Shown here one piece after another: positions 2,127 through 40,983 of a stretch of DNA of 43,619 bases. The notes under the pieces were generated by a model, which was given only the letters and a program-made list of their open reading frames with translations, made no database searches and was not told the origin of the DNA. Location: the NCBI GenBank assembly GCA_001179505.1, contig CDMY01000607.1, positions 1-43,619 of the forward strand, given 5' to 3'. Positions within the stretch are counted from its first letter, which is position 1, and each line of letters opens with the position of its first letter. Origin of the DNA: Vitrella brassicaformis CCMP3155 (taxonomy: Eukaryota; Protista; Chromerida). The position numbers were made by a program, and so were the translations under genes.

Positions 2127-2471
2127 CCCTCAGCACCGACAAACAGGGCTGCTTTCTACGACATCCAGGGGATCAGTGAAACGCCAAGTCACCTGCAACA
2201 GACAAAGGGCGGCGGTGATGGATCCGTGTGTGTGTTCGGTCTGTCTTCACGGCACTCACCTGTGCGGTCTTTGTGCGCCTAAAGCCTGCCGGCGCGGGCT
2301 CGCCGTGAATGGATTCGATTTGCCGCAACGAAACTACACGCCATGCGGCTGCACACATTCCTTTCTCCTCTGCTCCTCATCCTCAAGCGAGCTTTTTTGC
2401 GAGCTTGAAGCAGATCTCCCCCTAGAGTTTGACCATTTCCTGCATCTACGACATCCTCAATACAAGCACCG

Positions 2472-2667
2472 ATGGACTCGGATGATGACATGCTCAGTCT
2501 GGATGAATCCGCGCCGCCAGAGCAGCATGCAGCGAGTGACGAGGCTCTGAGCCGCGTGGCAAGAAGAAGAGGAAGGGCGGAGGCTTCCAGTCGATGGATC
2601 TCAGCGCCGGCGTGCTCAAGGGCGTCCTCAGGATGGGCTGCAAGGTCCCGACTCCCATCCAGAGAAA
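2472..2667 (+). pseudogene. DDX54: Orphan first-exon fragment of DEAD-box RNA helicase DBP10/DDX54 (Q-motif region), frameshifted
   Basis: ATG at 2472 gives MDSDDDMLSLDE...; a shifted frame near 2558 gives [37 protein letters not shown], matching the DDX54/Dbp10 N-terminal GGFQSMGL...[18 protein letters not shown] donor follows at 2668, but no downstream exon with motif I (ARTGSGKT) is visible before the next gene. Confidence 0.75.
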
Positions 2668-3243
2668 GTGCGTGTGTCATCCATTCATTGCATCCCATCC
2701 ATCGAGAAGCGTCCGCACTGGCGTGGACTGGTCACTCATCCACTCGGTCAGTCAGTCAGTCGTGATGGGCACACTGGTGCATCGGTGAATATGTTATATC
2801 ATCTTATATACACACACAGAGAGAGAGTGAGTGCCCTTTGCTCTGTTTCGGCTGCATGTCGCTCGCTGTCTGTCTGTCTGTCAGTCTGTCTGCATCGATC
2901 AGCTTGTGGTCCGTCGGGCACAGCTAAATAGGCAGGCAGTACGTGAGGCCCGCAAGTGGCGGCCAGCTATTTATGTATCGACAATGGAGAGCAGATCAGT
3001 CATTGAATGAATGAGAATGAATGATATGCACTGTATATATATCGAGGGACTAGGCACTAATCACACCCACCCACACTCCAAACCTGCCCACCGCTTGCAA
3101 CCGTGGTGGCCTGGCCCCTCTAGTCTAGCTAGGCATTCCATCCCTCGGTCTCTTTATGGATCCACCCTCCCTCCCGCCGATGCAGCCGCCCATCAGTCTA
3201 TCTATCGGTCTCTCTGTCTTTCTGTCTCTAACTCTGTGCCTAT

Positions 3244-5757
3244 CTATGTCTCCTGGCTGGCTGCTGTGGCCTTGGCCTTCTCCTTCATGAGCGACTTGAT
3301 CACCTGCTGAACCTGCACACACCACACACCACACCACAGCAGCCAGGAGGTATCGCGTGTGCCGTGTGCTGCTGTGTTACTCTCTCCCTCTCTCTCTCTC
3401 TCTCTCACGTCTGTGGCCTGCACGTGTGGCGGCTTCTGCCGGGGGTTCTCCTTGGCGTCAGCCACCCAACTCTCGCGAGCCTACACACACCACACACACG
3501 CAGCACTGTGTCCCCCACTCACCAGTGTATGTGTGTGTTTGGACGTACCCGTTTGTTGAGTGCGACTACGATTTGGGCAGTGGTGGAGCCGGCCTCCCAC
3601 ATGTCGCTGATCACCTGGGGGAAGTCGGACGTCAGGGGGTGGTCGAACACCGCCTGCCGCCGCGCAGACAAAATGCTCGGCTCCTGAACAAACGAACGAA
3701 CGAACCGCCCCCGCGCCCGAGAGAGAGAGAGAGAGAGAGCGCCACATCAGTCCAGACTGCGGGTGGGTGGGTGTTGAAGTGAGGGCAGGCACATACCTGG
3801 TGTGCGAAGAGGACGTCGGTGCCCGGGCGGATGTCGGGCACGACGTCAGGCCACTTGGCGTCCATCAGGAACCGCACCGCAAACCCGCCCTCGCCCACAC
3901 CACCAACACTAGCATCCTTGCCAGCGGGTGCAGCAGCAGCCACCACTGGCTGCTGTTCTTGCTGCTGCTGTGTCTGTTTCTGTGCTGCTGGAGGCTGCTG
4001 CTGCTGCTGGTGGTCGGGGATGGATACGAGGGCCGGGCGCCACTCCTCGTCGTTGTTGTCCTCCTTGTGGTAGTACCTGCACACACCAGACAGACCACAC
4101 ACAGACGGAGGGTGGGTCGGCGCGAGGCTGGGGTGGGTGGTTTGGTGGTTTGGCGGCTTGCCTTGCGAATGCGAAGCACTCGTCGTCGTCGTTGATGGTC
4201 TCCCACAGGTTGTCGCCCTGCTCCTTGCTGCGCGACTCCAAGCGCTTCCGGAGCTTCGCATACCTAAATGAGTGAGTCAATGAGTGGGTGGACGAGGGAG
4301 GACAGACACAGAGTGACACAGAGAGAGGGAGAGAGGGATGTGTGTGTGTGTGTGTGTGCGGGGCTGTCACTTGGGGTTCTTGTCTGAGTATGCCCTGGTG
4401 GGCGCCATGATCTTGACGTGGTGAATCTGCGCAGACAGACAGACAGACAGACAGAGTGCATTTGAGCACACCCCACCGTCTCCTCCCCTCCCCTCCCCTC
4501 CCCTATGTTTGTGTAAGTGCTGATAAATGGATGGAGGGCCCACCGTTGCTTCTGGTACGCCGAATTGGAATCGAGTGCGGTAGTGTTTGAGCAGCAGGTC
4601 GGGGTCCAACGGCTCCCAGTTCTTCTCGTCTTTGAACTCTGCAACATTTGCGCGCACACACGCGCACACACACACACACACACACACCCGTGTGAGTGGT
4701 GGATGGATGGATGGACAAAGCCTCACACACCTTCCATGAGCACTTTTCTGTAGTCTTTGTGTGTCGGGCTGATGCGACTAAGGCGCTCCGACGGGATGAG
4801 CACCAAAGCACAATAACTGACAATCAATATGACAACAGCCACAGCAGCGACACCGGCTGGTGTCCGTCTGTCTGTCTATCTATCTGTCTGTCAAGCACTC
4901 ACTGACCGAGAGGTGTTGGTGAGGGAGATGCCAGAGTACTTGGACAGGCCCTTCTCAGCCATCTCCTTCTTAGCCAATTCTCCCGCAGCCAAATGGGTCT
5001 TGAGGATCAAATCTGAACACACACACACACACACGCCTTCGTCTGCCCATCCATCCATCCCCTGTCCAGCTTCCTCCCTCCCTGCCGCTGCCCGACCTGT
5101 GACAGAGTCCGATGCCAGCAGAGTCACCCCATGGGAGCCGGCGGCACCAGAGGAAGTCTGCCCCCTCCCTGGACCAGCCGCCCCGGCAGCCATCATCCCA
5201 CCACCACTGCGAAACTCAATCTTGATCTGAGAGTCCCAGAACTTGTCGCTGACTTCTTTGATCTCCTTCTGAGCGGCCCCACGCGCGCCGACAGGGCCGG
5301 CCTGCTTGCGAGCGTCCGCTTGGGCTTGCTCGAGGTGGTCGATGGCCGCTGCGGCGCCGAGCTTGATGTCGAAGGTGTTGTCCTGATTCCAATCGGGGTT
5401 GCACGTTCGCTGCACATTCACGCACCGCAAAGAGAGAGACAGAGAGAGGGGGTGGTGGTGGTGTGGTGGGTGGTGTGGGTGTGGTTGGGGTACTCACGGG
5501 GATTGTCTTGTAGGGTTTGTGTTCGTATCTGTTTGTGTCGGTGTTGAAGCCCTGTGCCAGCTCGAACCGCCCGGTGGTCTCATTCTGACACCAAACAGGG
5601 CACGCTGGTTGATGTGGCTGGCTGGCCATTGCGCTGTCTGTCTGTGTGGGTCGGTGTGGCTGTGGGAGCTCGCCTTGAGCCACACGCGGACGAACGGGTC
5701 AGGAGAGTTGTTGCCATCCACCATCCGCAATCCGTTGGCGCTCCTGACGCACACACA

Positions 5758-5793
<36 letters not shown>

Positions 5794-6936
5794 AATGGGC
5801 GCAGGCCTCTGTGTGTGGAGGGCTGTTGTGAATGTCCGTGTGGACGCGCACGCACAGGAGTTTGAGGTGCAGCCTTCCGCGCTGCTCCTGGCCCGCACTC
5901 GCCAGCTCGGTGCAGGGGTACTCCCACTTGGCCCGGACACTCACGGTGCCCTTCACCTGCACACACACACACACACACACATGCGATTGTCTGTCCATGT
6001 GTGTGTAGAGAGGTACCTGCGCCCCGGCTGGGAGCTGCTTGGTCTTGCCCCCTCTGAAGCGCCACACCAGACAGACCGACACGCACACGGGGAGAGAGAG
6101 AGACAGAGAGAGAGAGGGAGATTCCATGCCTTCGCGCACATGGCTCCCTGCATCCCTCCATCCCTCTCCCTCGTACATCGCTTTTGTGTTGTCCGATTGG
6201 TCGTCTGGGGCCTTCAGCTCGAGGTTGTTGAGCGACCGCAATGTGATCAAACTCGACAAAGACGGCAGCCAGCACTCGCCCAGCAGCCTGACAACCACAC
6301 AATCACATCCATCCATCCATCCAATGAGTGTGGGAGGGACATTCTGCTTAGCTTACGTGGGTGTCCTTTTGAACAGCCTCTTGGTCGGTGATTTGCTGCG
6401 CGTCCCCGTGAGCGACAGAGCGACGTCGGGATCGGGATCCTGGTCCCACACCTCGAGCAGCACCGCCTGGCCGGGGTCCACGCTGCCGAACAGCTCGTCA
6501 ACCTCGGTGCCACTCGGCAACCACACATTCATCTGCACACACAGACACACGCACACAGAGAGAGAGGGAGAGATGGATGGATGGAGCAGGGGAGAGGGGG
6601 GGGGAGGGGGGGTGGGGTACCTACCTGGACAGGCTCAGGGTTGTAGTTCTGCTGTTCTATGTTTGAGAAGCGTGCGAGGGATTCGGTGAGGAGGGGGCAG
6701 CTGAGCATTGCCGTGAGGAAGAACGACTTGTCCACGTAGAACAGAGACCTGTCCCTCTCCTATGGATGGGAACCAACACACACACACACACACACAATCG
6801 CAAGAGATGCTTGCAGGAGTGTGTGTGTGTGTGAGTGTGGTGCTTGCCTGGTCGTCGAATCTGCACACGGGCTCGGGGCTGTCGTACTGGATCTGAACAC
6901 GCACACACCCAATACACGCACGCATCGCCTGTCCCC

Positions 6937-6969
<33 letters not shown>

Positions 6970-9900
6970 TGGTTACCACTCCGCGCTTCACAGGTATCTT
7001 CACGCACACCCTCTCACCAGACGCACTCCGCGAGTACCGAATCCTGCACCATACACACACACACACACACTTCAGCCCATCCCACCCACCCACACCCACT
7101 CTCGGAACTGACCGCAGCCAAGTGGCCCAGTTGGGTGGCCTGATGCCCATGTCGCTGAGCTTGGTGTTCTCCAGCGGCTTCTCCGAGCTGAATTTGAGGT
7201 CGATCTCGCCGGTGCGCGATATCTGCCGCTCCCACTCGCGGACGACGTCGGCCGTCACGTCCACAGAGTTGTGGGGCGGGTCGGAGTCGTCCAGACAGGC
7301 CTCGATGATCGACGGCGTCACGCCAAACCTACCCCAAACCGCACACGAACACACACAGACACAGAGATAGAGAGAGAGAGAGGTGCAAGGGGTGAGGTGG
7401 GGGAGGATGGACGCACCGAGAGAAGGTGGAGTCGGCGAGGCAGATGGCCTGTCTGTTTGAGCAGATGTGCAGGCTGCGCGTCATGATTGCGTGGGTGAGC
7501 GCCCGGCAGGCCTGCAGAGTGATGTGGGTGGCGCCCTTGCCAGCTGCGGACGATGACGCCAGCTTCGGGTCGACCGCCAGCTCGGCAGAGGCCGTCGCGT
7601 TGAAGGTCCAGACCACTGTCGAGGTGTCCAGTTTTGCGGCGTCCGTGTGCATGTCGGTGCCCTTCTTCTGCGCGCGCTCCCTCTTCGCCTTGTCGAATTG
7701 CTGCTTCTTCCTGCATGCATTTCACCCACACACAGGTCCACACAGAGAGAGATGCCCTCATGCACTCCCGGCACACACACGGGCATCGTACGCACAGACA
7801 GAAGCCCTTACTTCTGCACTATGTTGAGATAGAACTTCGCGTCAGTCGGCTTCTCCCTCTTGTCACGGTCGATGTAGTAGACCTGTATGTAAGGCTCCTC
7901 CGTCTGCTGCGCTGAGAAGAAGTGGATGGCGTCGACGTGCACCGTCAGGCGGCCCTTGCCCGAGCCCGGCTGGCCCTCGCGCCACGACACCTGCACACAG
8001 GCAGGGAGGGAGGGAGGGAGCGTCTCTCCGTCTGTCTGTCTGTCTGTTTGTCTGTCATATGTGTGTGTGGTGGTGGCACTTGCCTGCATGGTGATGCGGC
8101 CGACCTGCTCGCCCGTGCCATACGTCGCCGGTGAGAACTGCTGGGAAGGGGGCATGTTCTGCGCGCATTAATGCACAGACAACACTCAATGGAGGAGAGA
8201 TGGGCAGAGGTGGACGGGGTGGACGGTGGGGCAGCGTACGCTCATGGACTGGGGGTTGACTAGCAGCAGGTCCTCGTCCTTCTTCTGCCCGCCGGAGTAC
8301 TTGCCCAGAGACGACAAGTACGCCTCGCCCAACGTCTGACATGACATGACGGCACCCAAAACGATGTGTTCTGGTGCTTTGGTGTGTGTGTGTGTGTGTG
8401 TGGCTCACTCGTGGTGGGGGCCTCTGTGCGGCGGTGACGGCGATCTGCTGCTTGGGCTTCGCCATCACACGCAGGATGACCGCCGGCGTGTGCCCGGGGA
8501 TGATCCCAGCTGGAAGAATGGATGACACACACACGTCTATTGAGGTTGGGGGAGGGGCAGGGAATTTGGCTTACACACGGCGTCTTCCGAGTCGTCCTCT
8601 TCGTCTTCGATCTGCAGGCATCCCACACACCGCACACTCACACACATGGAGTCTCTCTGTGTGTGTTTGTGTGTGCGTCTGTGTGTCTGTGTGCTGACCG
8701 CTAGTGTCGCCAGTTTGCTGCCCTTGAGACGGATGCTGGGGAGGCCGGCCAGAGACAGGTCAGGAGGAGGACGGCAGCCCCACACCTAGCCCCCCACACC
8801 ACCACCATAACACACACGCGCACGCACACACACACACAGACACACACAGACGATCCATCCATCCATCCATCCATCCATGAGAGCCCCCCCCTCTGTCTGT
8901 CTACACCACCCACCCTGAAGAGCTGCAGGGCCTTGCGCGACGCCGTGCCGTGACACGTGACGATCAGCGCTGTGAGGATCTCCTGCAGATTCAACCTGCA
9001 CACACACAAAGGCAGTTCAAGCAATGGATGGATGGATGGATGGCTCGATGGCTGACTTGTTCTCCACGCCGGTGTGGGTGAAGAGCTGGCAAAACTGCCG
9101 GATATATGGGGCCCACGCAGGAATCTGCACCCACCAACCAACCAACCAACCAGCCAACCAACAGAACGATGAATGGACATTTCCCCATTTCCCCATTTCC
9201 CCCCGCCGCCGATACCCACACCTACCGATGCCCCAGCAAAGTTCTGGAAGTCTATGGCAGTCGGGAACACCCCCTTGGGCGGCCCCCTCGCGCCACTTGA
9301 CTTCTCCCACAATTTCACGGGCGCGGGGGCCGCCTTGTTGACCTCCTGGAAAGCCGCCGCCACCGAGCTGACGCAAGAGAGGAAGCGGCCGAAGGCGGTC
9401 TTGCCTCCGGGCGCCTCGAAGCTACCGGAGAGGTCGGCCGGGGTGGGCCGATGGAACGCCGCGAAGGGCAGCACCTGCAGGCACACATGAGGTGTGTCGG
9501 GTGTGTGTGTGTGGGGGGGGNNNNNNNNNNNNNNNNNNNNNNNNNNNNNNNNNNNNNNNNNNNNNNNNNNNNNNNNNNNNNNNNNNNNNNNNNNNNNNNN
9601 NNNNNNNNNNNNNNNNNNNNNNNNNNNNNNNNNNNNNNNNNNNNNNNNNNNNNNNNNNNNNNNNNNNNNNNNNNNNNNNNNNNNNNNNNNNNNNNNNNNN
9701 NNNNNNNNNNNNNNNNNNNNNNNNNNNNNNNNNNNNNNNNNNNNNNNNNNNNNNNNNNNNNNNNNNNNNNNNNNNNNNNNNNNNNNNNNNNNNNNNNNNN
9801 NNNNNNNNNNNNNNNNNNNNGGGGGGGGGGGGGGGGGATTGGGGCATACGTCTGATGCGGCTGTGGTGGAGTCGGCTTTGAGAAAGTGGCCGAACAGGTG

Positions 9901-10476
9901 CTTCTCAATGTAGTCGCAGTCGATGCCGGGCAGTTGCCACCGCACCTTCTGCACCCACCACACACACAGAGACGCGGAGAGAGACACGAGAGGTGTGGTT
10001 GGATGAGCACACAGGGTGGGTGTGTGGGTGCGTCTCTGGACCTCCTGGTTGGTTCGTGGGTCGTGGAGACTCGGCGGCCTCTGGCCCTGCACCAGCTCCT
10101 TCAACCAACTGTTCTGCCGCTCATACATCTGAGAGAGACAAGCACAACAGACCGTCATCAACACGTATCTGACGCTCTATCCCCCGCCCGCCCTCTCACG
10201 ATGTAGAAGTCCCCCCATTGCTTGATCCAATGGGAGTACAGCGGCTCCACCGGCCGCGAGTCAAAGAGGGTGCGCGCGAACAGCACGCTGTCGGCCCACT
10301 TGACGAACTCGACCAGCTTGCTCTCGTCGTGGAGCGTCGTGAAGGCGTTCTCGATGCACTCGCGGCACTGAGTGGCGCTCTCGGCCTCGACCAGGTCGTC
10401 ACCGCAGTGGCAGATGACCGCGTAGGCCAGACAGATGAGCGACTTGCGGCCATGCGGATAGACCTGATGCACCTGA

Positions 10477-10510
<34 letters not shown>

Positions 10511-11242
10511 TGGAAGCCACACGCAACACACAACACACTGCCTCCCTCCCTCCCTCCCTCCCTGTCTCTCTCCTTATGGCGTACCGGCAAAGTCAACTGA
10601 GGGAAGAGGATGTCCCACAGCCGGAACAGGCTGTGGTTGGGCAGTATGCCGGCGTAGAGGCGCATGAAGGCGGGGTAGAAGAAGTCCATCAGCGAGAAGC
10701 CCAGCGAGAAGAGGCGGGTCCAGATGGGCTCCGCGTGCGCCGCCAGGCAGCACTCGAGCAGGAATACGTCGCCCATCGCGCCGCTGGGGGCCGCCAGGGG
10801 GCCGTTCGGACACGGCACACGCAGCTCCAGGGGCTTCCTGAACCCACACACACACACACACGAGATCCGTTGACACATACGGCACACAGGGGGGCGTGTG
10901 GTGGGTGTCTCACTCCGGCAAGGGACCGGATGTGCTTGCTGCTGCCGGTGTGGCGGGTGTCGGGGCCATGGTGGGGTTCTGTGGCTTGGCCCAGTAGGTC
11001 GCGAGCTTTCCGTGGAAAGGCCCGTTGCCCCCCGCCATGGTGTAGATGAGCCAGAAGACCTCTTCCGCAGTCAGCTGGCTGCGCTCCTGCCCCTTGCCGT
11101 GCGGCAGCAGCATGTGCAGCGCCACCAGAGCGATCGACTTGGAGTACTTGATGGGCAGCCTGCCGAAAGGCATGTTGTTGCCGCTGCCGTCGTCCTTTCC
11201 GTAGCCGGGGTTGGCACCGTTGCTGAATGCGATGAGCGCCTG

Positions 11243-11273
<31 letters not shown>

Positions 11274-14200
11274 TACATCTAGATGTGGATGTGTGGATAT
11301 GTCTGTGGGTGTGGGGCTGGCAGGGGTGGGTTCCGACAGACCGTGCAGATCTGCTGCACTTTGGTGAGGATTGCGCGGAAGTTCTCCTTGTGCTCAGCCA
11401 GGCCCGTCGTCTCCCAGCCAGACTGACACACACACACACATAGAGAGAGGGACAGAGAGAGAGAGCGACGAATCCACACACCCCCTCCCTCCCTCCCTCC
11501 GCCCGCCCGCCCGCCCGCCCGCCCACCATCTCAGTGATGTCCTCGAGCAGCTGCCTCTGATCGGGGGTGTCGGTGCGCTGCCCCTCATGAAGCGACTTCC
11601 GATACATCTCCTTCTGGTGCGTCGACGGCTCCGATCGCAAGATCCCCAGCTGCAGCCACAGGGAGCGCCGCACTTGTGGCGGGAACCCCCCGTAATACAG
11701 CGATTCCAGTGCTTCGAGTTGCGCCTTGGCAGCGAGGCCGGCGTTGAGCCACTTCACCCTCAGTTGAGCGAGGTCTGTGAGAGGCTGGTGGCTGAGGGGC
11801 GGGATTGTGGCCGGCAATTCTTTCTGCTGGCCGTCGGCGTCCCTGCCGGTGACCATCTCCTGTGAGACGACTCGCGTGGTGAAGTCGGCGAAGGCCATCC
11901 GCTGCCGCTGCACCTCACAGTGGTGGTGGGCGTCGGAGTGCAGAAACCTTACACACACACACACACATAGACCCGGGAAGTTTAGTGGGGGCGTTGGGCA
12001 CCCAGCAGCTCACTTTTCCTTCTGCGCGAGGATGAACCGGTATTTGGGCACGGGCAACTCGCTGGGGCGCTGTGCTCTCAATACCTCCAGTTCCTTCCTC
12101 TCCTTCTCTGTTGCGCCTTGCGCTTCGGCTCTCCTGGTCGCTGCCGCGAGGGCGGCCTTGAGATCCTCCTCCTCACGGCGAATGGCCTTCCGAAGCCGGT
12201 CGATCTCCTCGGGAGGCATCCCACTGCACACACAGATCCATCATCCATCCATCCAGAAGTGCGTGTGCAGGGTGGGTGTTGGGTTCACCTGATGTAGGCC
12301 TCGAAGACGCTCTTGCGGTTGGAGATGAGGTTGGGCTCGTACTGGCCGAAGTGCACAGGCATCCCGAAGGCGTCAGGGAGGGTGGAGGACGTCTCGACGA
12401 GCATCGAGAGGTAAGCCTGACGCACACAGAGACAGACACACAGAGAGAGGGAGGGGGCCGTTTCGGTGTCATGCAATCAACCACAGACACGCCCGCATTG
12501 ACCTTTGCCGAAGGGGCTTCGAATGCCGCGGTGAGGAGCTGAGTGCGGTCCGAGGGGATGAAGCGCGTCATGATGTGGATGTCGCCCACTGAGTCCTCAA
12601 TCGGCTGATGGATGTATATGACGTCCACACACACACACACACACACACGGGCGCATGGGCGGAGAGCGTTGCTAAGCAGCACATCGAGCGACATACCTTT
12701 AGAGGCCGCCAGATGTTCTGGAAGGGCTCCGTGGCCTTCATCAGGCTGTCCACAGGGATGGACACAGAGCCCATAGGGTACTGCACACACCCCACAAGCC
12801 CCACACATGCCGCAATGCTGTGTGTGTGTGTGTGTGTGCCTGCGTACCTGTATGGCGAGCTTGCGCGTGGCGGGGTCGGTCTCCTGCCACACCATGAGCT
12901 CGATCTCCAAATCTGGCATCTCGTCCTGACCTTCCTCCGGCACTGGCTTGGGCACCAACTCGGGAGTCCGGAACACAAAACCACCTAGTACACACCACAC
13001 ACCGACGGAGAGATGGATGGGTGGCCACACACAGAGGGAGAAGGGCATGCCTGTGCTTCTGAGTTCTTGGATGGCGCTCCACTTTGGGTGTGCAGTCTGC
13101 AGGATGGCGGGGCTCTTGATGAGGCCGTCGTAGCTCTGCACCTCCGTCTGGTCGTTGGCAAGCTTCAGCCTGGTTGGTCGAGCGATTGATCGACACACAA
13201 AACAATATGGATGCACTCAAGGCACGGTTTCATTCTCTCTCTCTCCCTCTCTCTCTCCCTCTCTGTGTGTGTGTGCTTGGTTGGCACCTGAACGTGACGA
13301 TGGAGTTTATGGTGTTGTCTAGGTTGCGCTTCATCTGCATCTTCTGGACGGACTGCCCGGGCACCACGTCCAACGCTCGCCTGTTGTCACACACACACAC
13401 ACGCACACACGGAAAGGATGTCCTTGTTGCGTTGCGTTGCGTGGGGGGCTGAGGGCTTTGTGTGCGTACTTGATGTTGCTGCGCACACCGAACTGGTCAG
13501 TGCTCTTGAGGTTGATGGCCTCCACCAGCACCACCTCGATCTTCCCCGCCTGTCGCCTACACACACGAGCACCCACACACAAACACTCACACCCATCTCT
13601 CTCTCCCTCTCTCTCTCTCTGTCTGTGTGCAGTCCCTGACACCCACATGAGCTGAGGGTCGCCCCACAGGTGCCGGAGCAGCCTCCTTCGAGCGGTCGTC
13701 TCGTCGGCCACCATGTAGTTCTGCACCTTGAGCATCTGGCTGTAGTGCTCCTGGCGGATGGCGATGTTGAGCACCCGGGCGAAGTCGTGCATCTCTTTCT
13801 CTGTGGGGAACTTGATGGACGCCGTCCACTCGTAGTCGCACACAGAGGGATTGGCGTCCCAGGGAAGCGGGGCGGACCTGGGCCGCACGTAGCACTTCTC
13901 GACGACCTCGGGGGAGGACGACTGCCCTCCTGAGGTGCGAGCGGCCTCCCGGCTGGCGGCCTCTTCGGCCTCTTGGCTGGCGGCCTTCATGATGTCCTCT
14001 GCCGTCGTGCACGAACAGTCGTAGATGGGCACACCTACACCACACCACACACAACACACTCCTATGTGCGCCGGGTTGTTGCTCGCTGGTCTACACATAC
14101 CAGCTTCGAAGATGGGCTCGATCTGCGACAGGTGGATCCGCTTCACCAGCTGCTTGTACAGGTCGTCCCACCCCTGCGCCGCACCGCCACCAACACCACC

Positions 14201-15958
14201 ACCCTGCTGCTGCTGCTGCTGCTGGATCTTCTTCAGGAACTCGGGCGGCAGAGCGACGTCGGCCGTGCCATCGGGATACACCGACAAGACCGTGACAGGC
14301 AGCTGATCGGCCAGCAGAGGGAGACACATTCGGATGGGGAGAGTGGGGTGGTGTGTGTGTGTGTGTGTGTTTGTGTGCGTGGTCACGGGTTTCTTGAGGT
14401 GTGTGAGTTGCTCGACGGCTTTGTTGATGATGAGGTTGGCGTTGTCGCCGAGGATGCGGTGCCAGACGCCGGGGAACTTGCCCAACACGAACTCCTGCTC
14501 GGACGCTGGCAGCACAAACTTGTGGGGGATGACGTCCTGCACACACACACAGGTGATGTGAGAGGTCTGCCTTGTGTAGGCGTGTGTTCTGGTGTGGCTT
14601 ACGGAGCAGTAGACGGGAATGCGGTGAGGCTCCAATTTCATGCCCAGTAACTCCAAACCCTACACACACACACATGGCGGATGTCCACTTGTCTGTCTCT
14701 CTCTCTCTCTCTCTCTGTGCATGTGTCTGTAGAGGGCTGGTGGCCACCAGTGGCCCACCGATGCTTTGAACTCCCACGCGGTGGCGGGTTCGCGCAGCGG
14801 AGCAGGCCACGGCTGCCCGCTTCTGGCGTACGTCTGGACACCCACACACAGAGAGGACGACCTGTATATGTGTGGGAAAGCCGCCGTTGGGGTGTGCCTG
14901 ACGGCTGACCTGCTGGTCGTTCTCCTTATAGGTGCCTGGGAGGAATCGCCGGCGGTAGGCGCGCTCGTCCTGCCCAATCGGCACCAACCAACACAGTGGA
15001 CGGAGGCCGCTGTGTGTGTGTGTGTGTGTGTCAAGGTACCTGCGGGTATCTCATGGGCTCCTCCATCATGAGCAGGGCCTGGCAGCCCGGGAAGATGCGC
15101 TTCGGGAGCAACACACGCTCCTACACACACACACACACACAGAGAGAGAGACTTCTGCTGCCTTGTTCCGCCTCTGTGTCAGGGTGTGTGTGTGTGTGTG
15201 TGGCGCCAAAGTACCTGTGGGTCGGGAGCATGGCCCTGCACCCACGCGCGATCCCTGCAAACACACAAACAACCACACACAGCCGACAAAATCAATCTAC
15301 ACCGACCAATGGACGTGTTCGTGTGTGTGTGTGTGTGTGTATGTACGCCACGCACCTGAGGCAGAGGTCCACCATGCACCTGGGGACCGTGCGCTGGAGC
15401 TCGACCTTGGTGTACATCTGCCTGAGCTTCTGGGGCGAGTAGTCGTACTGCTTGATTTTGTCGTCGCCGCAGAAGGGGACGTCCACCCTCTCGCGAAGCA
15501 TGTTCACAACCATGCCCTCCAAGTCGATCAACGCCCTGGAAAATGCGATCCATCCATCCATCCATCCACCCACTCTCTCTCTCTCTGCCGGCCACTCTGT
15601 GTGTGTGTGAGGGGGGGGAGTCTGTCTGTCTTACCTGCCGATGACGGTTGGTTCAGACGGTGTGGCCTTGCCCTCTCCCCTGAGAAGTCACACACACAAA
15701 TAATAAGGACACGCAATGGCGCCCACGCATCGAGACAGCCAGGTACCCACTCACCTGCCGAACTCCGTGAGCACAGGGGCGTCCATCTTGAGCAGGGTGA
15801 CTTCCACGACGGGCTGCCCCTGTGGGTGGGTGCGGTACATGGCCGAATGCGGCGGGATGGGCAGGAACACCCTGGTGCCGTTGAAGGGCAGGTGGTTAGC
15901 CGACACCACGCCGAAATCCCCACTCGACGACCCCGATGCATCACTGCAACACACCAGA

Positions 15959-15994
<36 letters not shown>

Positions 15995-16633
15995 GGTGTG
16001 GGGGCGTACGTCCTTTGTGTTGGGGGGGGCTCATTGATGCCGAGCATTCGGCCGGTGATCCGCCTGCGCCACGGCGACAGCACCCGCACCGACCCGCAGC
16101 GGACCTCGAAGTAGTACAGCTGCGGTCGCCTGTCATCATCTGCACGCACCAACACACACACCCATAATGACGCGGGTCGGTGTGTTTGTGTGGTGCCTCT
16201 GGTGCATGGTTACTTCCGAGGTCGTCCTTGGCGAACTGCAGTGTCCAGAAGTCGATCTGCAGGTAGCTGCCCACCTCCCCGGAGGCCTCAGCGCTGGGCA
16301 GCTTGGCCGTCGACCTGTCCCACCCAGCCGACACATCCATCCATCCATCAAGGCCATTTGTGACGCCCGGATGAGATTGCCCGCTCACTTGGTGTGTGCG
16401 TCGACGGGAGCGAGGTAGGCATGGGAGTGAGACGTGTAGAGGGCCGAGTAGGGTCCCATGCCCACGCTCTCGGGGCACATCGGCTTGGCGGCGATGTCGT
16501 GCATCACGCTTTTCTTGACCGTGTACTCGACCTCGATGAAGCCGTAGCGCTCCGTCGGCTTGTGCCAGGCGCCCAAGGAGTCCTCAGGCCTTTCACGCGC
16601 ACATTGGAACACACACAGATGCGGGAAGAGGTC

Positions 16634-16665
<32 letters not shown>

Positions 16666-19600
16666 GGNNNNNNNNNNNNNNNNNNNNNNNNNNNNNNNNN
16701 NNNNNNNNNNNNNNNNNNNNNNNNNNNNNNNNNNNNNNNNNNNNNNNNNNNNNNNNNNNNNNNNNNNNNNNNNNNNNNNNNNNNNNNNNNNNNNNNNNNN
16801 NNNNNNNNNNNNNNNNNNNNNNNNNNNNNNNNNNNNNNNNNNNNNNNNNNNNNNNNNNNNNNNNNNNNNNNNNNNNNNNNNNNNNNNNNNNNNNNNNNNN
16901 NNNNNNNNNNNNNNNNNNNNNNNNNNNNNNNNNNNNNNNNNNNNNNNNNNNNNNNNNNNNNNNNNNNGGGGGGGGGGAGCTGGGGTACCTGAGCGGGACT
17001 CTGAAGAATTTCTTGGTGCCGTCTATGTTGAGGGGCGTCTTTTCGTCCTGGGCCTTCTCGGTGTCCTTCTGGCCCTTCTGGTCCTTCTCGTCTTTGGTCT
17101 CGACCCCCTTGAGCATGTCGGCGATGGGCAGGCTGCCCGTCAGGTAGCACCTCTTGCGCAGCCGCCGCCCGTCACCCTGCTTGTTCCCCCCACACACACA
17201 CAGACACACAGACCCAATCATATGAGCGTGTGTGTCTGAGTCTTATGTGTCTGTCTGATGGCACTGCACTGACCGCTTCCTCTGCCTCAGGGTCCGACGC
17301 AGATGTGGAAGCAATCGAGCGCATCCCTGCACACCACACCCATTCCATCGTCAAGTGGAGGTATGGGTGATGGGTGGAGATGGCGTACCAGGTGAGCCGA
17401 GTGAGGTGGGGGCCTGGGTGGAGACCCGATCCCGCTGCCACACGTCGAAGAGCACGTCCTCCTTGCCCACCACCGAATGCAGCGCATCCACATACGCTGA
17501 TGACACACCAGACCAGATGCACAATCACACACGACACAGACACCTACGCAGTTGGTCCATCTGGAGTGTGCGTGTATGTGTGTGTGTGTGGAGCTCACCG
17601 AGGTCCTCTGCTGTATTTCCGCAGATGGGGATGTCTACGGTGAGTTCCATGGCGTAGTTGGGGCGGTCGCCCTCGTGGTGGTTGGGGCTCAGGAAGCGGT
17701 GGTTGAGGAGATGCACACTCAGCTCGGTCTCCAGGGCACCGCTGCCTGCACCATGCAGTAAAAATGAAGACAGACACACATCCATCCATCCATTCGTCAG
17801 ACGGACAGATGAGAAGAGAAAGGTACCGACCGCCGCTTCTCGGTGTGGCGCCGGATGAAGCCGATGTGGCTGCACACACACACACACACACACGCACAGA
17901 CAACACACACACGTAGCGTGGAGCACCCCACCCATTCCCGCCTCCCTCCCACCTTGTGTGGACGGCCGCTCGCCATCGGGTGTGACCGACGCTTTCCCAA
18001 TCGTCAGGCTGATGCTCAGGCTCATCGGCGGCGGCGGCGGCGGCTGCTGGCCTGCGAGAGAAGCCGACCCACCCACCACTTGGATGGGCGGCACGGCGCG
18101 CTTGGCGAACGTGACGCCCTTGACGGACAGGGATGGCGCCTTCTGTGTGGTCTCCTTCTCGGCTGCAGCGGCAGCAGGAGGTGTATCGTCCTGGTCCGCC
18201 GCCTCTCCGCCCTCCAAGTGTTCTTCTTCTCCTCCTTTGTCGTCTTGCTCGATGGCCTGGTTGATGGCGTCGCGCAAAGTCTCGCCGTTCTCCTGCATGA
18301 AGCAGCGAGAGGTGTCTGTGGTTGGCTTGGGTTGGTGGATTCAGCTTCGTCTCTCTCTACCTGTCCGCACAGCTTGTTGATTTTGTCAACGAACCCGGGG
18401 GAGGGGTAGATGCGGAATCGCACGAGGGATGACCTCTCCTTCGCCCTTCAAAGACACACACACGCACCACAGAGAGAGAGAGAGAGAAAGGCGTGTGTGT
18501 GCGTCTGTCTGTCCATGTGCTGTGCTGTGCCGACGGACCTACCTGGTGACACTGGCGAGCAGCACCTGATCGCTCCGCAATTGCAGCACCTGGTCGCCCC
18601 GCTCCCGCGGCACACCCAATGCCTGTGTGTGATCGCGACATAAAACACTACTACATTGACACACAAAGGGGGGTGGGGGGGGTGGGGGGGTTACTCGTCT
18701 GAGCATTTCTTGCAGCCGCTCCAGTTGGAGAGTGGCGTCACCCTGACACATCAAACACAGGACCAACACACACACACACACACACACACGAATGCCCCTT
18801 TTCCTCTCTCTCTCCCCGCTCCGATGTCTGTGTGGTGTGCGCACCTTGCCGTCGATGAGCTGGTCAGCGGTAGATGCGACGTGCACGTCCACCACAGCGT
18901 ACTCGTTGGCGCGAGTGGGCCGCACCTTTGGACCGCACAGCGTCAGCCAGTAGCCCTGGTCGACACACACACACATAGAGAGAGAGAGAAAGGGGTGTGT
19001 GACGGGCGGGAGAGGGGGAGGATGGATGTGTATGTGTGTGTGTGTGGGTGCGGACCTCTGAAGTGTCGCAGGCTACGACGTTCTCGCCCCCAGGCATCAG
19101 CTCGAGCAGAAACTCATTCAACATCTGCACACACGCACACACAGACGCGTGGCGCCTGTCCGCCTGTGCGCCTGTCCGTGTGTCCGTGTGTGTGGTGTGT
19201 GGTGTGTGGCGTGGAGGTCGCTGACCTGATTCTTGACTATGAAGGCCTGGGCGTCGATGCGCCGCGTGTTGACTACCACACTCGAAATCGATGACAACCT
19301 GCCACACACAGACACACACACACACATCCACCCCACACATGTGTGTGTCCGGCCGCTCAGCCAGCTCACTTGACGAAGTTGGAGAAGCTGGCCCGTGTGT
19401 TGGCGGCACCCGTCTCGTGCGATGGTGCGATGTTGAGGTGCCGCAACGAGTCGGAAGCAAACACGTGACACGTCTGCACCCGCAGTGGGGTCGCCGAGTA
19501 CTGCGCATCCTGCACCCCCAACACACACACACACAGAGTGACATCAGCTGCTGTGTTGTGTGTCGGGGGGGGATGGTCCAGGGCTACCCCGCTGGCCGTG

Positions 19601-20123
19601 TCAGGGTGCATCTTGATGGTCTGTGCGGCGTAGTACTCGCCGAAGTAGGTCTGCAGCACCTGCTCGCGCGTCTGGCAATCGAACGCCACGGCTACGAAGT
19701 GGCCCGTCCTGCGCCAAAGACACACACATGGGTGAATAGGCGTGTGTGTGAGAGGGGTAGTAGACCTACTTGATCTTGTTGAGAGGGAGCGCCTTCCTGA
19801 CGACGGACCACTGGCTCTTGTCAACGAGGGTCTTCTTGTGGCTGCGGAACTTGGTGCCGATCTTCTCGACTACCTGCAACTTCACCTGCACACACGCCCC
19901 ACGCACCCAACACCCAACCAAACACACACACACCACCATCCTGGAAATGCACCCATCCCGTGTCATCTCAGCTGCCCACCTGGTCCTCAGTCTGCCGCAG
20001 CTTCTCCTTCTGCTCGCGGGCCCGCTGGACCATGCCCCTGCGCACAAACAGACAGACAGACAGACAGACACAGTTAAAGAGAGAAAGAGAGAGAGAGATG
20101 ATGGGATAGCTGCCGTGTGCGGG

Positions 20124-20163
<40 letters not shown>

Positions 20164-22354
20164 GGTGTACGGTGTGTATGGAGGAGAGAGAGACATCCTG
20201 ACCTCATGATCTGTTTCTGCAGCTCCTCTTGCTGCTTCTTCTTCGCTATTTCCTTGGCGTAAGTGGCCTTCCACTTGGTGTAGCCCTTGGACAGCGGCAC
20301 GTGCAGCAGCCGACCCACCACGTTCCGAATCATGTTGCGCTTCTCCTTACGCTCCTCGTACTCGCCCCTGATGGCCTCCCAGCCCTGTTTGATGATGCAC
20401 CACACACACACACGCGCACACACACGGGGGGTGTGGGGGCTGCAGCGGGGCTGGTGACTGACCCTGCAGACAGCCGAGTTGATGATCTTCTGCACGCTGC
20501 GGTGCAGGAGGTCCACCTTGCTGAGGTCGCGCAGATGCCTGCAACACACACACACACAGAGAGAGAGATTCTCGCGTGTGTCGGTTGGGACTCACGAGCC
20601 CGCACCGCCCCGCACCGACCGTGCCGTCAGAATGGCGGTCTTCCAGGCCTCGGCGTGCTGGAGCTCGTGTGTGTAGAGGTACATGTAGCCGTAGGTCCTA
20701 TCGCCGCTCTTGAAGACGCGCTGGGGCGACAGCACCTTCACACGGTACTGGTCGACCCATTCAACGAATCACACACACAGGCAGACAAAGAAGTGAGTGA
20801 CACACACACACACACACACACACATGGGGAGCGCCAGGCTGACGCACGCACCTGGAATTGTTTGCCGGCGGCGTCTGAGAGGAATGGGGGGAAAATCTTC
20901 TGGCCCGCCGTGTTCTCCTCGATCTTCAACTTCTCCGGATCAACCTTCACACACACAACCGCACACACACCCACACAGCCACACAACCGCAGAGAGGGAG
21001 GTAGCCCACGAGGCTTTGTCTCTTTCTCCCTCTCCCTCTGTGTGTGTGGGGGGTGGGCTGGTTGGGGCGGTTGGGCGGCTTTGCTTACGTCTTTGATGTC
21101 GTAGACCTTTTTCCGCTCTCTGAGTGCGTCAGCGGGCGGCTCCTTGCTCTTGAAACAGGAGATCTTCCCCTTCTCCATCCGGAAATACCGCGGCCTACAC
21201 ACCACACCACAACACAACACGCCACAGCACAGATCTTCTGTGTGTCGGTGGGTATGGTGTGTGGTAGGGGGGGTGGGGGGGGCTGGCTGACTTGATGCCC
21301 TTGGACTTCTTGCCCTCCTTGCCCATGAAATCTCGTTTTGTGGCCGAGAAGGCCTCGTCGGCGGCCGACGACACCGGCACGGGGCCGTCCGGCTCCACGC
21401 TCACCGTCTCTTTGCCTTCACGCAACGACCTCAAACTCCGCTCCTGACACACACCGGTGGATGCACACATGCCATTTGGTGGGTCTGTGGGTGCTTGGCG
21501 TCAGTCACTCACCTCATTGAGTATCTTAGATTCGGTCTCCCTCTTCGCCGCCGGGTCGTCGTGAGGGAGGGCCTTCTTGGTGTCCTCGAGAGCTATCCAG
21601 GCCGGCACACATACACTCATGGTGCACACGCACAGGTGTTGTGTTGTGTTGTGTTGTGTGGTGTTGCGTGTGTACCCTTGATCTTGTGTTGGCACGCTGC
21701 GATGGAGAGGGCGGTCTTGAGCTTGCGACGGTACAAGGTGTCATCCCTCTGCACACACACTCACACACGACACATAGGGTGGCTGTTGTGCTGTTGTGCA
21801 CGTGTGTGTCGGGGGTGAGGTGTCTTTACCAGTTTTTTGCCCTCTTTGTCTTTGGTCTCCTTGACGGTGCCCTTGAGCCACCCCGCCGACACCTCCACAT
21901 TGCTCTTCTCGCCATTGCTATTCCTAAACACAAACTGAGTCTTCTCGCCCGGCTTCTGCACACACACACACACACACAGACATGCAGAGAGGACGCCATC
22001 TTTGGGTGCATTGGATGCATGCACACGCGCAATGTGTCAGGTGTGAGCAGGGGTCACACCCATACCTGCCCCGCCGGCCGGGGCTGCGACCCGGAGGACC
22101 GCGTGCTGCAGCAAGCACCAACCAGAAAAGACGCAGGAAGTTAAGAAATACGGCAAGGAGGAGGCTCATGTGTGCGTGGGTGGCCAGATGCGGCACCTCC
22201 CGCACACACATGCGCACTGGGGACACCTCCACACCCACTGGCCATGCTGCCAACACCCTGTGTGCCGTGTTTCTTACGTCATTTTGGATGTGAGCTGCGG
22301 TCAGATGGTCCGGTACGTCCTCACAGGCATCCCAACACGTGCATTCCCCCTCAT
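3244..22354 (-). CDS. Giant multi-exon protein: N-terminal PH-like domain, coiled coil, several C2 domains, TBC/Rab-GAP-like domain, EF-hand-like segment, further C2 domains
   Basis: Dozens of consecutive minus-strand GT-AG exons with coding-like frames. PH-like: KPRYFRMEKGKISCFKSKEP...LQHAEAWKTAILT. C2: AGKIEVVLVEAINLK, VLLEVWDQDPDPD, SANGLRMVDGNNSPDPFVRVW...CNPDWNQDNTF. TBC: GGFPPQVRRSLWLQL...FRLWDILF. Last exon ends KAKATAASQET-TAG at 3244. The start (ATG 22354; tentative exons 22354-~22317 and ~22105-22066) is uncertain. Not every junction was verified and two N gaps fall in introns, so a split into two genes cannot be excluded. Confidence 0.7.
4990..7985 (-). other. C-terminal C2-domain region of the giant gene
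   Basis: Exons encode GKGRLTVHVDAIHFF...EPYIQVYY, AVLLEVWDQDPDPD...LLGECWLPSLSSL, VKGTVSVRAKWEY...GRLHLKLL|SANGLRMVDGNNSPDPFVRVWL and CNPDWNQDNTFDIKL, which are typical C2 strand/loop motifs. Confidence 0.75.
8900..9480 (-). other. EF-hand-like segment following the TBC domain
   Basis: IDFQNF...LNLQEILTALIVTCHGTASRKALQLFR resembles the FxEF..L...G...EKL..F EF-hand motif found after TBC domains in TBC1D8/9-type and recoverin-type proteins. Confidence 0.5.
9521..9820. other. Assembly gap (300 N) in an intron, flanked by poly-G
   Basis: N run bounded by G homopolymers. Confidence 0.98.
10200..11760 (-). other. TBC (Rab-GAP) domain region of the giant gene, apparently non-catalytic
   Basis: YYGGFPPQVRRSLWLQLG...QLLEDITEM|SGW...ICT|ALIAF...IKYSKSIALVALHML...EEVFWLI...FFYPAFMRLYAGILPNHSLFRLWDILF...SLICLAYAVI follows the TBC motif order. 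Confidence 0.75.
16668..16967. other. Assembly gap (300 N) in an intron, flanked by poly-G
   Basis: N run bounded by G homopolymers. Confidence 0.98.
20615..21330 (-). other. PH-like domain region of the giant gene
   Basis: FMGKEGKKSKGIK|PRYFRMEKGKISCFKSKE...YRVKVLSPQRVF...YMYLYTHELQHAEAWKTAILT: beta-strand pattern plus a terminal helix with the invariant PH-domain Trp. Confidence 0.6.
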
Positions 22355-23266: not shown

Positions 23267-23725
23267 GGTGGTGCCAACATTCTCAACCACAACAAGGCGA
23301 GCATCGCCATCAACTGGGCCGGCGGGCTGCACCACGGCAAGAAACACGAAGCCTCAGGTACCCCCCCCCCCCCCCCCNNNNNNNNNNNNNNNNNNNNNNN
23401 NNNNNNNNNNNNNNNNNNNNNNNNNNNNNNNNNNNNNNNNNNNNNNNNNNNNNNNNNNNNNNNNNNNNNNNNNNNNNNNNNNNNNNNNNNNNNNNNNNNN
23501 NNNNNNNNNNNNNNNNNNNNNNNNNNNNNNNNNNNNNNNNNNNNNNNNNNNNNNNNNNNNNNNNNNNNNNNNNNNNNNNNNNNNNNNNNNNNNNNNNNNN
23601 NNNNNNNNNNNNNNNNNNNNNNNNNNNNNNNNNNNNNNNNNNNNNNNNNNNNNNNNNNNNNNNNNNNNNNNNNNNNNTCCCCCCCCCCCCCCTCCACACC
23701 ACCGCTCACACACGAGGCCCACTTC

Positions 23726-40702: not shown

Positions 40703-40983
40703 CCGCGGGCGCGCACCTCAAGGGCGGCCTTCTGCAGGTCCGGCGATTCATCGCTGTCGGGGAGCTCCAGCCGAAGCCACTCCTGGAAGTTGAGCGAGAT
40801 AGTCGCAAGGCAACCTGCATGCAGGCACACACAGCAACACGTGCCTTAGGCGGCTTCTCATGCAAATGCTGGCTCCGCTATACGTCGGGCTGACCTCCGA
40901 AGCAGAGGGAAAGTGTCAGATACAGCAAGATCTAAGCCAGCATCGCGCAGAGGCTGCTACGCAGGGGACACAGAAGTAGTCAT

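What the first reader, a model, noticed from the sequence alone, without database searches (positions are those of the whole stretch)
10200..11760. TBC domain in a giant PH/C2/EF-hand protein lacks both the arginine and the glutamine finger: candidate pseudo-Rab-GAP
Seen: the spliced TBC reads QLLEDITEM|SGW where the consensus is IxxDxxR, and IKYSKSIA where the consensus is GYxQGM. Established: TBC GAP activity uses a dual Arg/Gln finger mechanism, and domains lacking these residues are inactive or act as Rab-binding scaffolds. Inference: this domain is a Rab effector or tether module rather than an enzyme.
Basis: partly seen in the sequence, partly recalled or inferred. Interest (0 to 1): 0.72.

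Follow-up and report, generated by a model that had tools for sequence, protein, structure and literature searches.

The report
Catalytically dead TBC domain, conserved family
A 3,620-residue Vitrella brassicaformis protein carries a real TBC (Rab-GAP) fold in which both catalytic fingers are replaced, as they are in all seven relatives found, so it adds a new family to the already known class of non-catalytic TBC domains.

Summary
The window is contig C607 of a 72.7 Mb, 1064-contig genome, and the database names the protein as Vitrella brassicaformis CCMP3155. A minus-strand gene (22107..3247) encodes the annotated 3,620-aa protein P0001.

Exons 11947-11527, 11422-11342, 11239-10914, 10837-10585 and 10472-10200 encode residues ~1985-2360. 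Three things support the splice pattern: spliced contigs in three runs, the annotated protein, and intron-less orthologue transcripts that read straight across the junction.

The domain is a TBC:
- An AlphaFold2 model (pLDDT 82.9) matches solved TBC domains at Z 19-22.5; the next unrelated fold scores 4.4.
- Orthologues pass the Pfam RabGAP-TBC cut-off. The Vitrella sequence alone does not.

Motif A (RxxxW) is kept. The arginine-finger position is E2038 and the glutamine-finger position is K2100. In eight family members these columns read E/H/H/H/N/L/L/K and K/E/E/E/E/E/E/E, and no neighbouring Arg is conserved. The loss is old and family-wide.

Non-catalytic TBC domains are already known (TBC1D7, TBC1D23, and three of 18 Toxoplasma TBC proteins), so this is a new member of a known kind. 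Rab binding or tethering remains untested inference. The EF-hand in the title is not supported by Pfam. The scan holds a similar note (s1-218534) on another piece of this genome; I found no second locus.

The parts
3247..22107 (-). Whole gene for the 3,620-aa protein P0001 (Vitrella brassicaformis 'C2 domain-containing protein'). About 40 exons. Two 300-N runs lie inside it.
   Evidence: tblastn of P0001 on the window; name and source
11527..11947 (-). Exon E1 (aa 1900-2039): linker, TBC motif A (R1992 at 11670-11668, W1996 at 11658-11656) and the motif B remnant QLLEDITEM (11553-11527)
   Evidence: (joint 11945/12012, cut +2)
11530..11532 (-). Codon GAG = E2038, at the position of the catalytic arginine finger (IxxDxxR)
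11423..11526 (-). GT-AG intron (104 nt) between E1 and E2
   Evidence: (92-letter count)
11342..11422 (-). Exon E2 (27 aa, SGWETT...QQICT). Carries the family-invariant W2042-E2043.
10914..11239 (-). Exon E3: a Vitrella-specific 17-aa insertion, the motif C remnant, and a low-complexity Pro/Ala loop
11138..11146 (-). Codons TAC TCC AAG = Y2098-S2099-K2100. K2100 sits at the position of the catalytic glutamine finger (YxQ).
10585..10837 (-). Exon E4: the best conserved TBC core (FMRLYA...FRLWD). The only exon with its own Pfam TBC hit.
   Evidence: E 1.4e-4, 22.1 bits; joint 10836/10913
10200..10472 (-). Exon E5: C-terminal helices of the TBC fold

Best explanation
Residues ~1985-2360 of the 3,620-aa Vitrella protein form a genuine TBC fold. 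It keeps motif A (RxxxW) and the hydrophobic core. It has Glu (E2038) where the catalytic arginine finger should be and Lys (K2100) where the glutamine finger should be.

The protein belongs to a conserved family of 2,300-3,600-aa proteins. The family has an N-terminal PH-like region, a central TBC and a C-terminal C2, and members are collinear over nearly the whole length. Every member found lacks both fingers. The Arg column is variable (E/H/N/L/K). The Gln column is Glu in all members except Vitrella.

Shown: the domain cannot accelerate Rab GTP hydrolysis by the canonical dual-finger mechanism. Inferred: it is a non-catalytic TBC used as a binding or scaffold module. It would bind a Rab without switching it off, or another partner, inside a large lipid-binding (PH, C2) trafficking protein. 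The residues flanking the dead fingers are invariant (Q-L-x-E-D, W-E, Y-x-x-S), which suggests the former active-site groove is still under selection as a binding surface.
For: Gene and splicing:
- Spliced contigs in three runs, with no such joints in the DNA run, and GT-AG/GC-AG ends.
- The annotated protein is identical to the exon model.

TBC identity:
- Orthologues P0002-P0005 match the region at E 1e-24 to 3e-30.
- They pass Pfam PF00566 at 32.8-48.5 bits against a cut-off of 25.2.
- The family profile hits PDB TBC domains: 4p17 at E 8e-6 and TBC1D4 at 2e-3, with collinear segments.
- 27 of 30 Atlas feature hits are TBC families.
- The AlphaFold2 model has pLDDT 82.9 and pTM 0.83.
- Foldseek's top 29 hits are all TBC domains.
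- VIA-align gives Z 22.5-18.2 for sixteen TBC entries, including Gyp1-Rab33 at Z 20.8 over 263 residues. The next unrelated fold scores 4.4.

Finger loss:
- Family alignments A1 and A4 and per-column counts.
- Joint alignment with 31 canonical TBCs.
- Pfam profile coordinates.

Full-length collinearity of the family.

Precedent: 3 of 18 Toxoplasma TBC proteins lack both motifs (PMC11101121). TBC1D14 acts as a non-GAP Rab11 effector (PMC3365497).
Against: - No binding or activity test was run. The partner is unknown.
- The Vitrella sequence alone is below the Pfam cut-off (14.1 bits for the whole protein, 22.1 for exon E4).
- hhalign against one canonical subfamily aligned only the C-terminal half, at 16% probability.
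- The residue-level mapping of the Arg finger rests on MAFFT, secondary-structure position and pattern. It does not rest on a coordinate superposition, which the tools do not print.
- The model was built from an alignment that included canonical TBC proteins, which favours a TBC fold.
- The near-invariant Glu at the Gln position could have a role I cannot assess.
Confidence: 0.8

Rival explanations
1. The dead TBC domain does not bind a Rab at all. It has been reused as a protein-protein interaction module for a non-GTPase partner, as in TBC1D7 (binds TSC1) and TBC1D23 (binds golgins).
For: TBC1D7 and TBC1D23 structures are among the structural matches (Z 15.7-18.9). The best weak per-exon PDB sequence hits were to TBC1D7. 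The Arg-finger column is free to vary while its neighbours are invariant, which fits a surface reused for another ligand.
Against: Catalytic TBC domains match better (Z 20-22.5) than TBC1D7 or TBC1D23. There is no specific sequence relation to either. Motif A, which contacts the Rab in canonical complexes (from memory), is kept.
Confidence: 0.3
2. The domain is still a GAP but uses a non-canonical mechanism. Other residues could act, for example the conserved Glu at the Gln position together with a basic residue from elsewhere or from a partner. Or it could act on the Rab's own cis-glutamine.
For: The former active-site neighbourhood is strongly conserved: Q2031, L2032, E2034, D2035, W2042, E2043, Y2098, S2101. 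Glu at the Gln position is present in 7 of 8 members. Non-TBC RabGAPs with other finger sets exist (LepB, PMC3674391, listed).
Against: No Arg is conserved at the finger position or at the nearby alternative 'PQRSD' site, which reads R/R/N/R/R/L/N/K. Vitrella itself has Lys, not Glu, at the Gln position, so even the family's conserved residue is not kept here. Mutating the fingers abolishes TBC function in tested cases (TgTBC9, PMC11101121).
Confidence: 0.08
3. The missing fingers are an artefact of a wrong splice model, an assembly error or a misalignment.
For: The codon for E2038 lies within 6 nt of a splice donor, in a stretch (11411-11533) where the read tool cut contigs at repeats. Pfam and hhalign do not align the N-terminal half.
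Against: The Arg-finger residue lies inside the exon, not at the junction. The contig letter count of 92 fits the model in three runs. Intron-less orthologue transcripts show the same finger-less motifs in one open frame. No differing letters were seen in laid contigs (table 3).
Confidence: 0.03

Closest known systems
Canonical dual-finger TBC RabGAPs (Gyp1p, RABGAP1/1L, TBC1D20, USP6NL, Chlamydomonas flagellar RabGAP 4P17)
   Same: Same fold (Z 20-22.5, 237-263 aligned residues, rmsd 2.5-3.5). Motif A RxxxW is kept. The C-terminal core motifs match Pfam PF00566 positions 137-193.
   Different: IxxDxxR reads LxxDxxE and YxQ reads YxK, so both catalytic fingers are missing. Sequence identity is only 10-16%. 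There are two Vitrella-specific loop insertions. The domain is embedded at residue ~2000 of a 3,620-aa protein.
Non-catalytic human TBC domains: TBC1D7 (TSC complex), TBC1D23 (golgin/WASH bridge), TBC1D14 (Rab11 effector)
   Same: TBC fold without a working dual finger, used as a binding module. TBC1D23 and TBC1D7 structures match at Z 18.9 and 15.7-16.4. The TBC1D14 precedent for Rab effector function is in PMC3365497.
   Different: There is no orthology. The domain architectures differ (TBC1D23 has TBC plus rhodanese; TBC1D7 is TBC only). The match is no better than to catalytic TBCs. The replacement residues differ.
Toxoplasma gondii TBC proteins that lack both motifs (TgTBC5, TgTBC6, TgTBC16; 207-324 kDa)
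   Same: Very large alveolate TBC proteins scored 'No/No' for IxxDxxR and YxQ (Table 1 of PMC11101121).
   Different: No Toxoplasma or other apicomplexan protein appeared among the homologues of the Vitrella TBC region in the 1,991-6,335-aa length range. No C2 or PH domains are listed for the Toxoplasma proteins in that paper. Orthology was not tested directly.

Membership tests
RabGAP-TBC domain (Pfam PF00566), as a fold/homology family | Pfam HMM score at or above the gathering cut-off (25.2 bits) | tested here: inconclusive
   Vitrella scores 14.1 bits (whole protein) and 22.1 bits (exon E4), both below the cut-off. Its orthologues (E 1e-24 to 3e-30 to the Vitrella region) score 32.8-48.5 bits, above it.
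RabGAP-TBC domain (Pfam PF00566), as a fold/homology family | All-helical TBC fold superposable on solved TBC domains | tested here: met
   The AF2 model has pLDDT 82.9. Foldseek's top 29 hits are all TBC. VIA-align gives Z 18-22.5 against 4.4 for the next fold. Caveat: canonical TBCs were in the input alignment.
RabGAP-TBC domain (Pfam PF00566), as a fold/homology family | Motif A, RxxxW | tested here: met
   R1992 and W1996 are invariant in all eight family members.
Catalytic dual-finger RabGAP | Arginine finger in IxxDxxR | tested here: not met
   L2032-x-x-D2035-x-x-E2038. The column reads E/H/H/H/N/L/L/K in eight members.
Catalytic dual-finger RabGAP | Glutamine finger in YxQ | tested here: not met
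   Y2098-S-K2100. The column reads K/E/E/E/E/E/E/E. Y lies at Pfam profile position 89-90, as in a canonical Vitrella TBC.
Catalytic dual-finger RabGAP | Stimulation of Rab GTP hydrolysis | not testable with these tools
   Needs a biochemical GAP assay.
Non-catalytic TBC acting as Rab effector or scaffold | Nucleotide-dependent Rab binding, or defined non-Rab partner binding | not tested
   No partner is known. Complex prediction was not run because no eukaryotic Rab reference is offered and no candidate Rab was justified.
EF-hand (as claimed in the finding's title) | Pfam EF-hand family hit or a canonical 12-residue Ca loop | tested here: not met
   No EF-hand family at E<=1 in nine segments of P0001 or at E<=0.05 in five members. 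Neither a strict nor a relaxed loop pattern found a site.
C2 domain | Pfam PF00168 above cut-off (22 bits) | tested here: met
   P0001 3124-3199 scores 27.8-32.4 bits. Four of five members match. Only one C2 per protein is detected by Pfam.
PH domain | Pfam PF00169 above cut-off (25.1 bits) | tested here: inconclusive
   P0001 144-264 scores 17.7-21.2 bits, E 4e-4 to 5e-3, covering profile positions 3-100 of 105. P0003 scores 19.7 bits. All are below the cut-off.

The most novel reading that the evidence does not exclude
The family is an undescribed, anciently conserved class of giant PH-TBC-C2 trafficking proteins of chromerids and other (probably marine alveolate) protists. In it the former RabGAP active-site groove (invariant QLxED...WE and Y-x-E-S) would have been rebuilt into an acidic binding or catalytic site with a new specificity. 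Examples would be locking a Rab in the GTP state at a membrane contact or tethering site, or acting on a different GTPase family.
Probability: 0.12. Interest if true: 0.55.

Novelty: new member of a known kind. Interest (0 to 1): 0.3.

Why it matters
Finger-less TBC domains are a recognised class, but their partners are known only for a few animal proteins. This is a clean, expressed, family-wide example from the free-living relatives of apicomplexan parasites, set in a very large lipid-binding protein. Conservation marks the residues around the dead fingers as the surface to test. If the partner is a Rab, the protein would be a candidate Rab effector or tether in the chromerid endomembrane system. 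If not, it adds a third way of reusing the TBC fold. In either case it should not be annotated or counted as an active RabGAP when Rab-regulator repertoires of alveolates are compared.

Tried and rejected
- Exon-by-exon Pfam and PDB sequence searches were nearly blank. Only exon E4 gave a sub-threshold TBC hit and weak TBC1D7 hits. The other PDB hits were designed repeat proteins, which I take as chance.
- Exon E1 against 1.84 billion representative proteins found only the Vitrella protein itself. It gave no orthologues, but it did give the reference P0001.
- Single-sequence AlphaFold2 failed (pLDDT 38) and that model was not used.
- A family-profile word search in the 237-754-aa length range found nothing at E<=0.001.
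- hhalign of the family against one canonical protein and against a 31-sequence canonical alignment aligned only the C-terminal half at low probability, so it could not place the fingers.
- I considered the alternative arginine in the 'PQRSD'/'GQRTD' loop, 13-15 residues upstream, as the true finger. I rejected it because it is not conserved (R/R/N/R/R/L/N/K) and lies in the loop at the opposite end of the helix in the model.
- A search for a dinoflagellate spliced-leader tail in the fetched loci found nothing.
- Searches of the Vitrella genome with the TBC region of P0001 and P0004, and with the upstream region of P0004, found no second locus. The paralogue suggested by note s1-218534 could not be confirmed.
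- The supplements of the Toxoplasma TBC paper do not mention Vitrella or Chromera.
- Complex prediction was not run because there was no justified partner.
- The joined spliced model was never typed or sent to any tool. Exons were searched by reference, and whole-domain work used the database's own protein P0001.
Full report
**What the window is.** The window is contig C607 of a genome of 72,700,666 bases in 1064 contigs. The protein database names the encoded protein as an unnamed product, 'C2 domain-containing protein', of Vitrella brassicaformis CCMP3155. The region 10200-11947 reads on the minus strand as five exons. They are separated by short GT-AG introns that end in (GT)n-CAG tracts.

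**How the spliced model was handled.** Exons were searched one by one by reference. The search with exon E1 returned the database's own annotated protein, P0001 (3,620 aa, 100% identical over residues 1900-2039). All whole-domain work then used P0001 and its sub-ranges as references.

**Gene model and splicing.**
- tblastn of P0001 on the window maps it to 22107..3247 on the minus strand, in about 40 pieces. Its sequence over the region is exactly the exon model: E1 11947-11527, E2 11422-11342, E3 11239-10914, E4 10837-10585, E5 10472-10200.
- Contigs of runs X1, X6 and X7 skip 10838-10913, 11948-12013, 10129-10199, 9949-10041 and further introns upstream. Contigs of run X3 cover the introns and show none of these joints, so X3 behaves as DNA and the other three as RNA.
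- All supported introns have GT-AG ends, except one GC-AG intron.
- The read tool cut contigs at repeats between 11236 and 11533. Even so, the same contig holds exactly 92 letters between 11235 and 11534 in all three runs. That equals 4 nt of E3, 81 nt of E2 and 7 nt of E1.
- Orthologue transcripts without introns read '...HM-AGWET...' where Vitrella reads '...EM|SGWET...' across the junction.

**Is it a TBC domain?** By sequence alone the Vitrella domain is marginal. Exon E4 gives Pfam RabGAP-TBC at E 1.4e-4 and 22.1 bits. The whole protein gives 14.1 bits. The cut-off is 25.2. The case rests on four other lines.
1. A word search with the region 1950-2365 of P0001 found four large relatives, P0002-P0005 (2,340-3,465 aa, E 1e-24 to 3e-30, 27-32% identity). 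A fifth, P0006, turned up as a member of P0002's cluster. The four score 32.8-48.5 bits on PF00566, above the cut-off.
2. A profile of the family hits solved TBC domains, with collinear segments: 4P17 at E 8e-6 and TBC1D4 at 2e-3.
3. Language-model features place the region among TBC clusters in 27 of 30 hits.
4. An AlphaFold2 model of P0001 1985-2365 was built from 8 family members plus 31 canonical TBC proteins. It has mean pLDDT 82.9 and pTM 0.83. Foldseek's 29 best PDB hits are all TBC domains. VIA-align gives Z 22.5 (RABGAP1L), 21.6, 21.3, 21.0, 20.8 (Gyp1p-Rab33, 263 residues, rmsd 2.9) and so on. The first unrelated fold follows at Z 4.4.

The caveat on line 4 is that canonical TBC sequences in the input alignment favour this fold. 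Lines 1-3 do not depend on that.

**Where the fingers should be.**
- *Motif A.* RxxxW is present (R1992, W1996) and invariant in the family.
- *Motif B.* All eight members have Q-L-x-E-D followed three residues later by a variable residue, then by an invariant W-E. In a joint MAFFT alignment the canonical R-I-F-x-x-D-A-E-R-T-F block of 31 TBC proteins falls on this block. Its Asp falls on the invariant D2035 and its catalytic Arg on the column that reads E (Vitrella, E2038), H, H, H, N, L, L, K.
- *Motif C.* The canonical D-Y-H-Q-G block falls on [A/V]-Y-C-E-S, which is K-Y-S-K-S in Vitrella. Pfam's own alignments start at profile position 74-87 in the four orthologues and put their Tyr at profile 89-90. 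A canonical Vitrella TBC exon (contig C331, GYVQGM) has its Tyr at 89. The glutamine column therefore reads K (Vitrella, K2100) and E in the other seven.
- *Position in the model.* E2038 lies two residues before the C-terminal end of helix 43-56 (model numbering), which a loop follows. K2100 lies at the first turn of helix 116-126. From memory of solved TBC structures, that is where the two fingers sit. I could not print a residue-level superposition.
- *An alternative arginine.* An Arg in the loop 13-15 residues upstream ('PQRSD', 'GQRTD' in Vitrella) could in principle be aligned to the finger with a different gap. It is not conserved (R/R/N/R/R/L/N/K) and sits at the other end of the helix. 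I reject it.

**The family.**
- P0001 is collinear with P0004 over residues 58-570 and 983-3619, and with the others over most of their length. These are orthologues or close paralogues of the whole protein, not just of the domain.
- One scan of metagenome contigs added L008, L009/L010 and L011. These are long open frames on 9-12 kb contigs, apparently transcripts.
- P0004 is encoded without introns on three ~10.7 kb metatranscriptome contigs. None of the sources names an organism.
- Pfam finds TBC in 5 of 5 members, C2 in 4 of 5 and a sub-threshold PH in 2 of 5. It finds no EF-hand in any, nor in nine segments of P0001 at E<=1.
- No second locus of this family was found in the Vitrella genome. 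The scan nevertheless holds a similarly worded note on 'another piece' of this genome (s1-218534). I could not confirm that it is a paralogue.

**Mechanism.**
- Shown: a TBC fold without the Arg and Gln that the dual-finger mechanism needs. The loss is shared by all known relatives. The protein is expressed and spliced.
- Established knowledge: mutating either finger abolishes TBC function (for example TgTBC9, PMC11101121). Finger-less or inactive TBC domains act as binding modules (TBC1D14 as a Rab11 effector, PMC3365497; TBC1D7 and TBC1D23 from memory).
- Inferred: this domain is a non-catalytic binding module inside a large protein that also has lipid-binding modules (C2; probably PH). The invariant residues around the dead fingers suggest the old active-site groove is still used as a surface. 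Whether the ligand is a Rab is open. I put that at roughly 0.4-0.5.

**Novelty and score.** Non-catalytic TBC domains are well known in animals. In Toxoplasma, 8 of 18 TBC proteins lack at least one motif and 3 lack both (PMC11101121, Table 1). The new elements are modest. One is a previously undescribed conserved family of giant PH-like/TBC/C2 proteins that includes a chromerid. Another is family-wide loss of both fingers. The third is a near-invariant Glu in place of the catalytic Gln. I rate it a new member of a known kind, interest 0.3.

Noticed in passing
window 9521-9820, 16668-16967, 23378-23677: Three runs of exactly 300 N. The first two lie inside this gene, and the annotated protein jumps over them (P0001 ~2400-2413 and ~946). 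Coding sequence may be hidden or missing there, including just downstream of the TBC domain.
   Followed up: partly
window 12985-13050 (minus strand): A GC-AG intron (66 nt) in the same gene, supported by spliced contigs in three runs. All other checked introns are GT-AG.
   Followed up: yes
window 10845-10862, 11950-11969, 14183-14225: (CA/GT)n tracts at intron 3' ends produce many false long-range 'joints' and loose ends in public contigs of all four runs (for example 10862->11951 and 10861->14203). These are repeat artefacts, not splicing.
   Followed up: partly
window ~13550-12550 (P0001 ~1583-1770): A block just upstream of the TBC domain is conserved in the family. Its pattern (consensus 'GGQLEVVLVEARRLKP ... 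GEIHIMTRWLP') looks like a C2 beta-sandwich, but Pfam gives no hit at E<=1.
   Followed up: partly
window ~8997-8905 (P0001 ~2517-2546): A helix-loop-helix stretch (NKLNLQEILTALIV..GT..RKALQLF) recalls, from memory, the EF-hand pairs of neuronal calcium sensors. There is no canonical Ca loop and no Pfam hit.
   Followed up: partly
window 39917-40717 (minus strand): A separate gene with ankyrin repeats (Pfam Ank E 1e-17 and 2e-6 on two open segments).
   Followed up: yes
window 12241 (inside intron 12224-12288): Three contigs of the DNA run X3 carry one extra C behind 12241. This is a polymorphism or a homopolymer error, and it is non-coding.
   Followed up: no
L001 1-25: The metatranscriptome contig that encodes orthologue P0004 begins CTCAAG and has GGCTCAA at 17-23. 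From memory this resembles the tail of the dinoflagellate spliced leader. It is a weak hint that this orthologue is dinoflagellate. The longer leader pattern was not found in any locus.
   Followed up: partly
G000 contigs C331, C859, C243, C410 and others: The Vitrella genome holds at least a dozen other TBC loci. Two checked canonical ones have intact fingers: C331 (DLPRT / GYVQGM) and C859 = P0007 (DAERT / DYHQG).
   Followed up: partly
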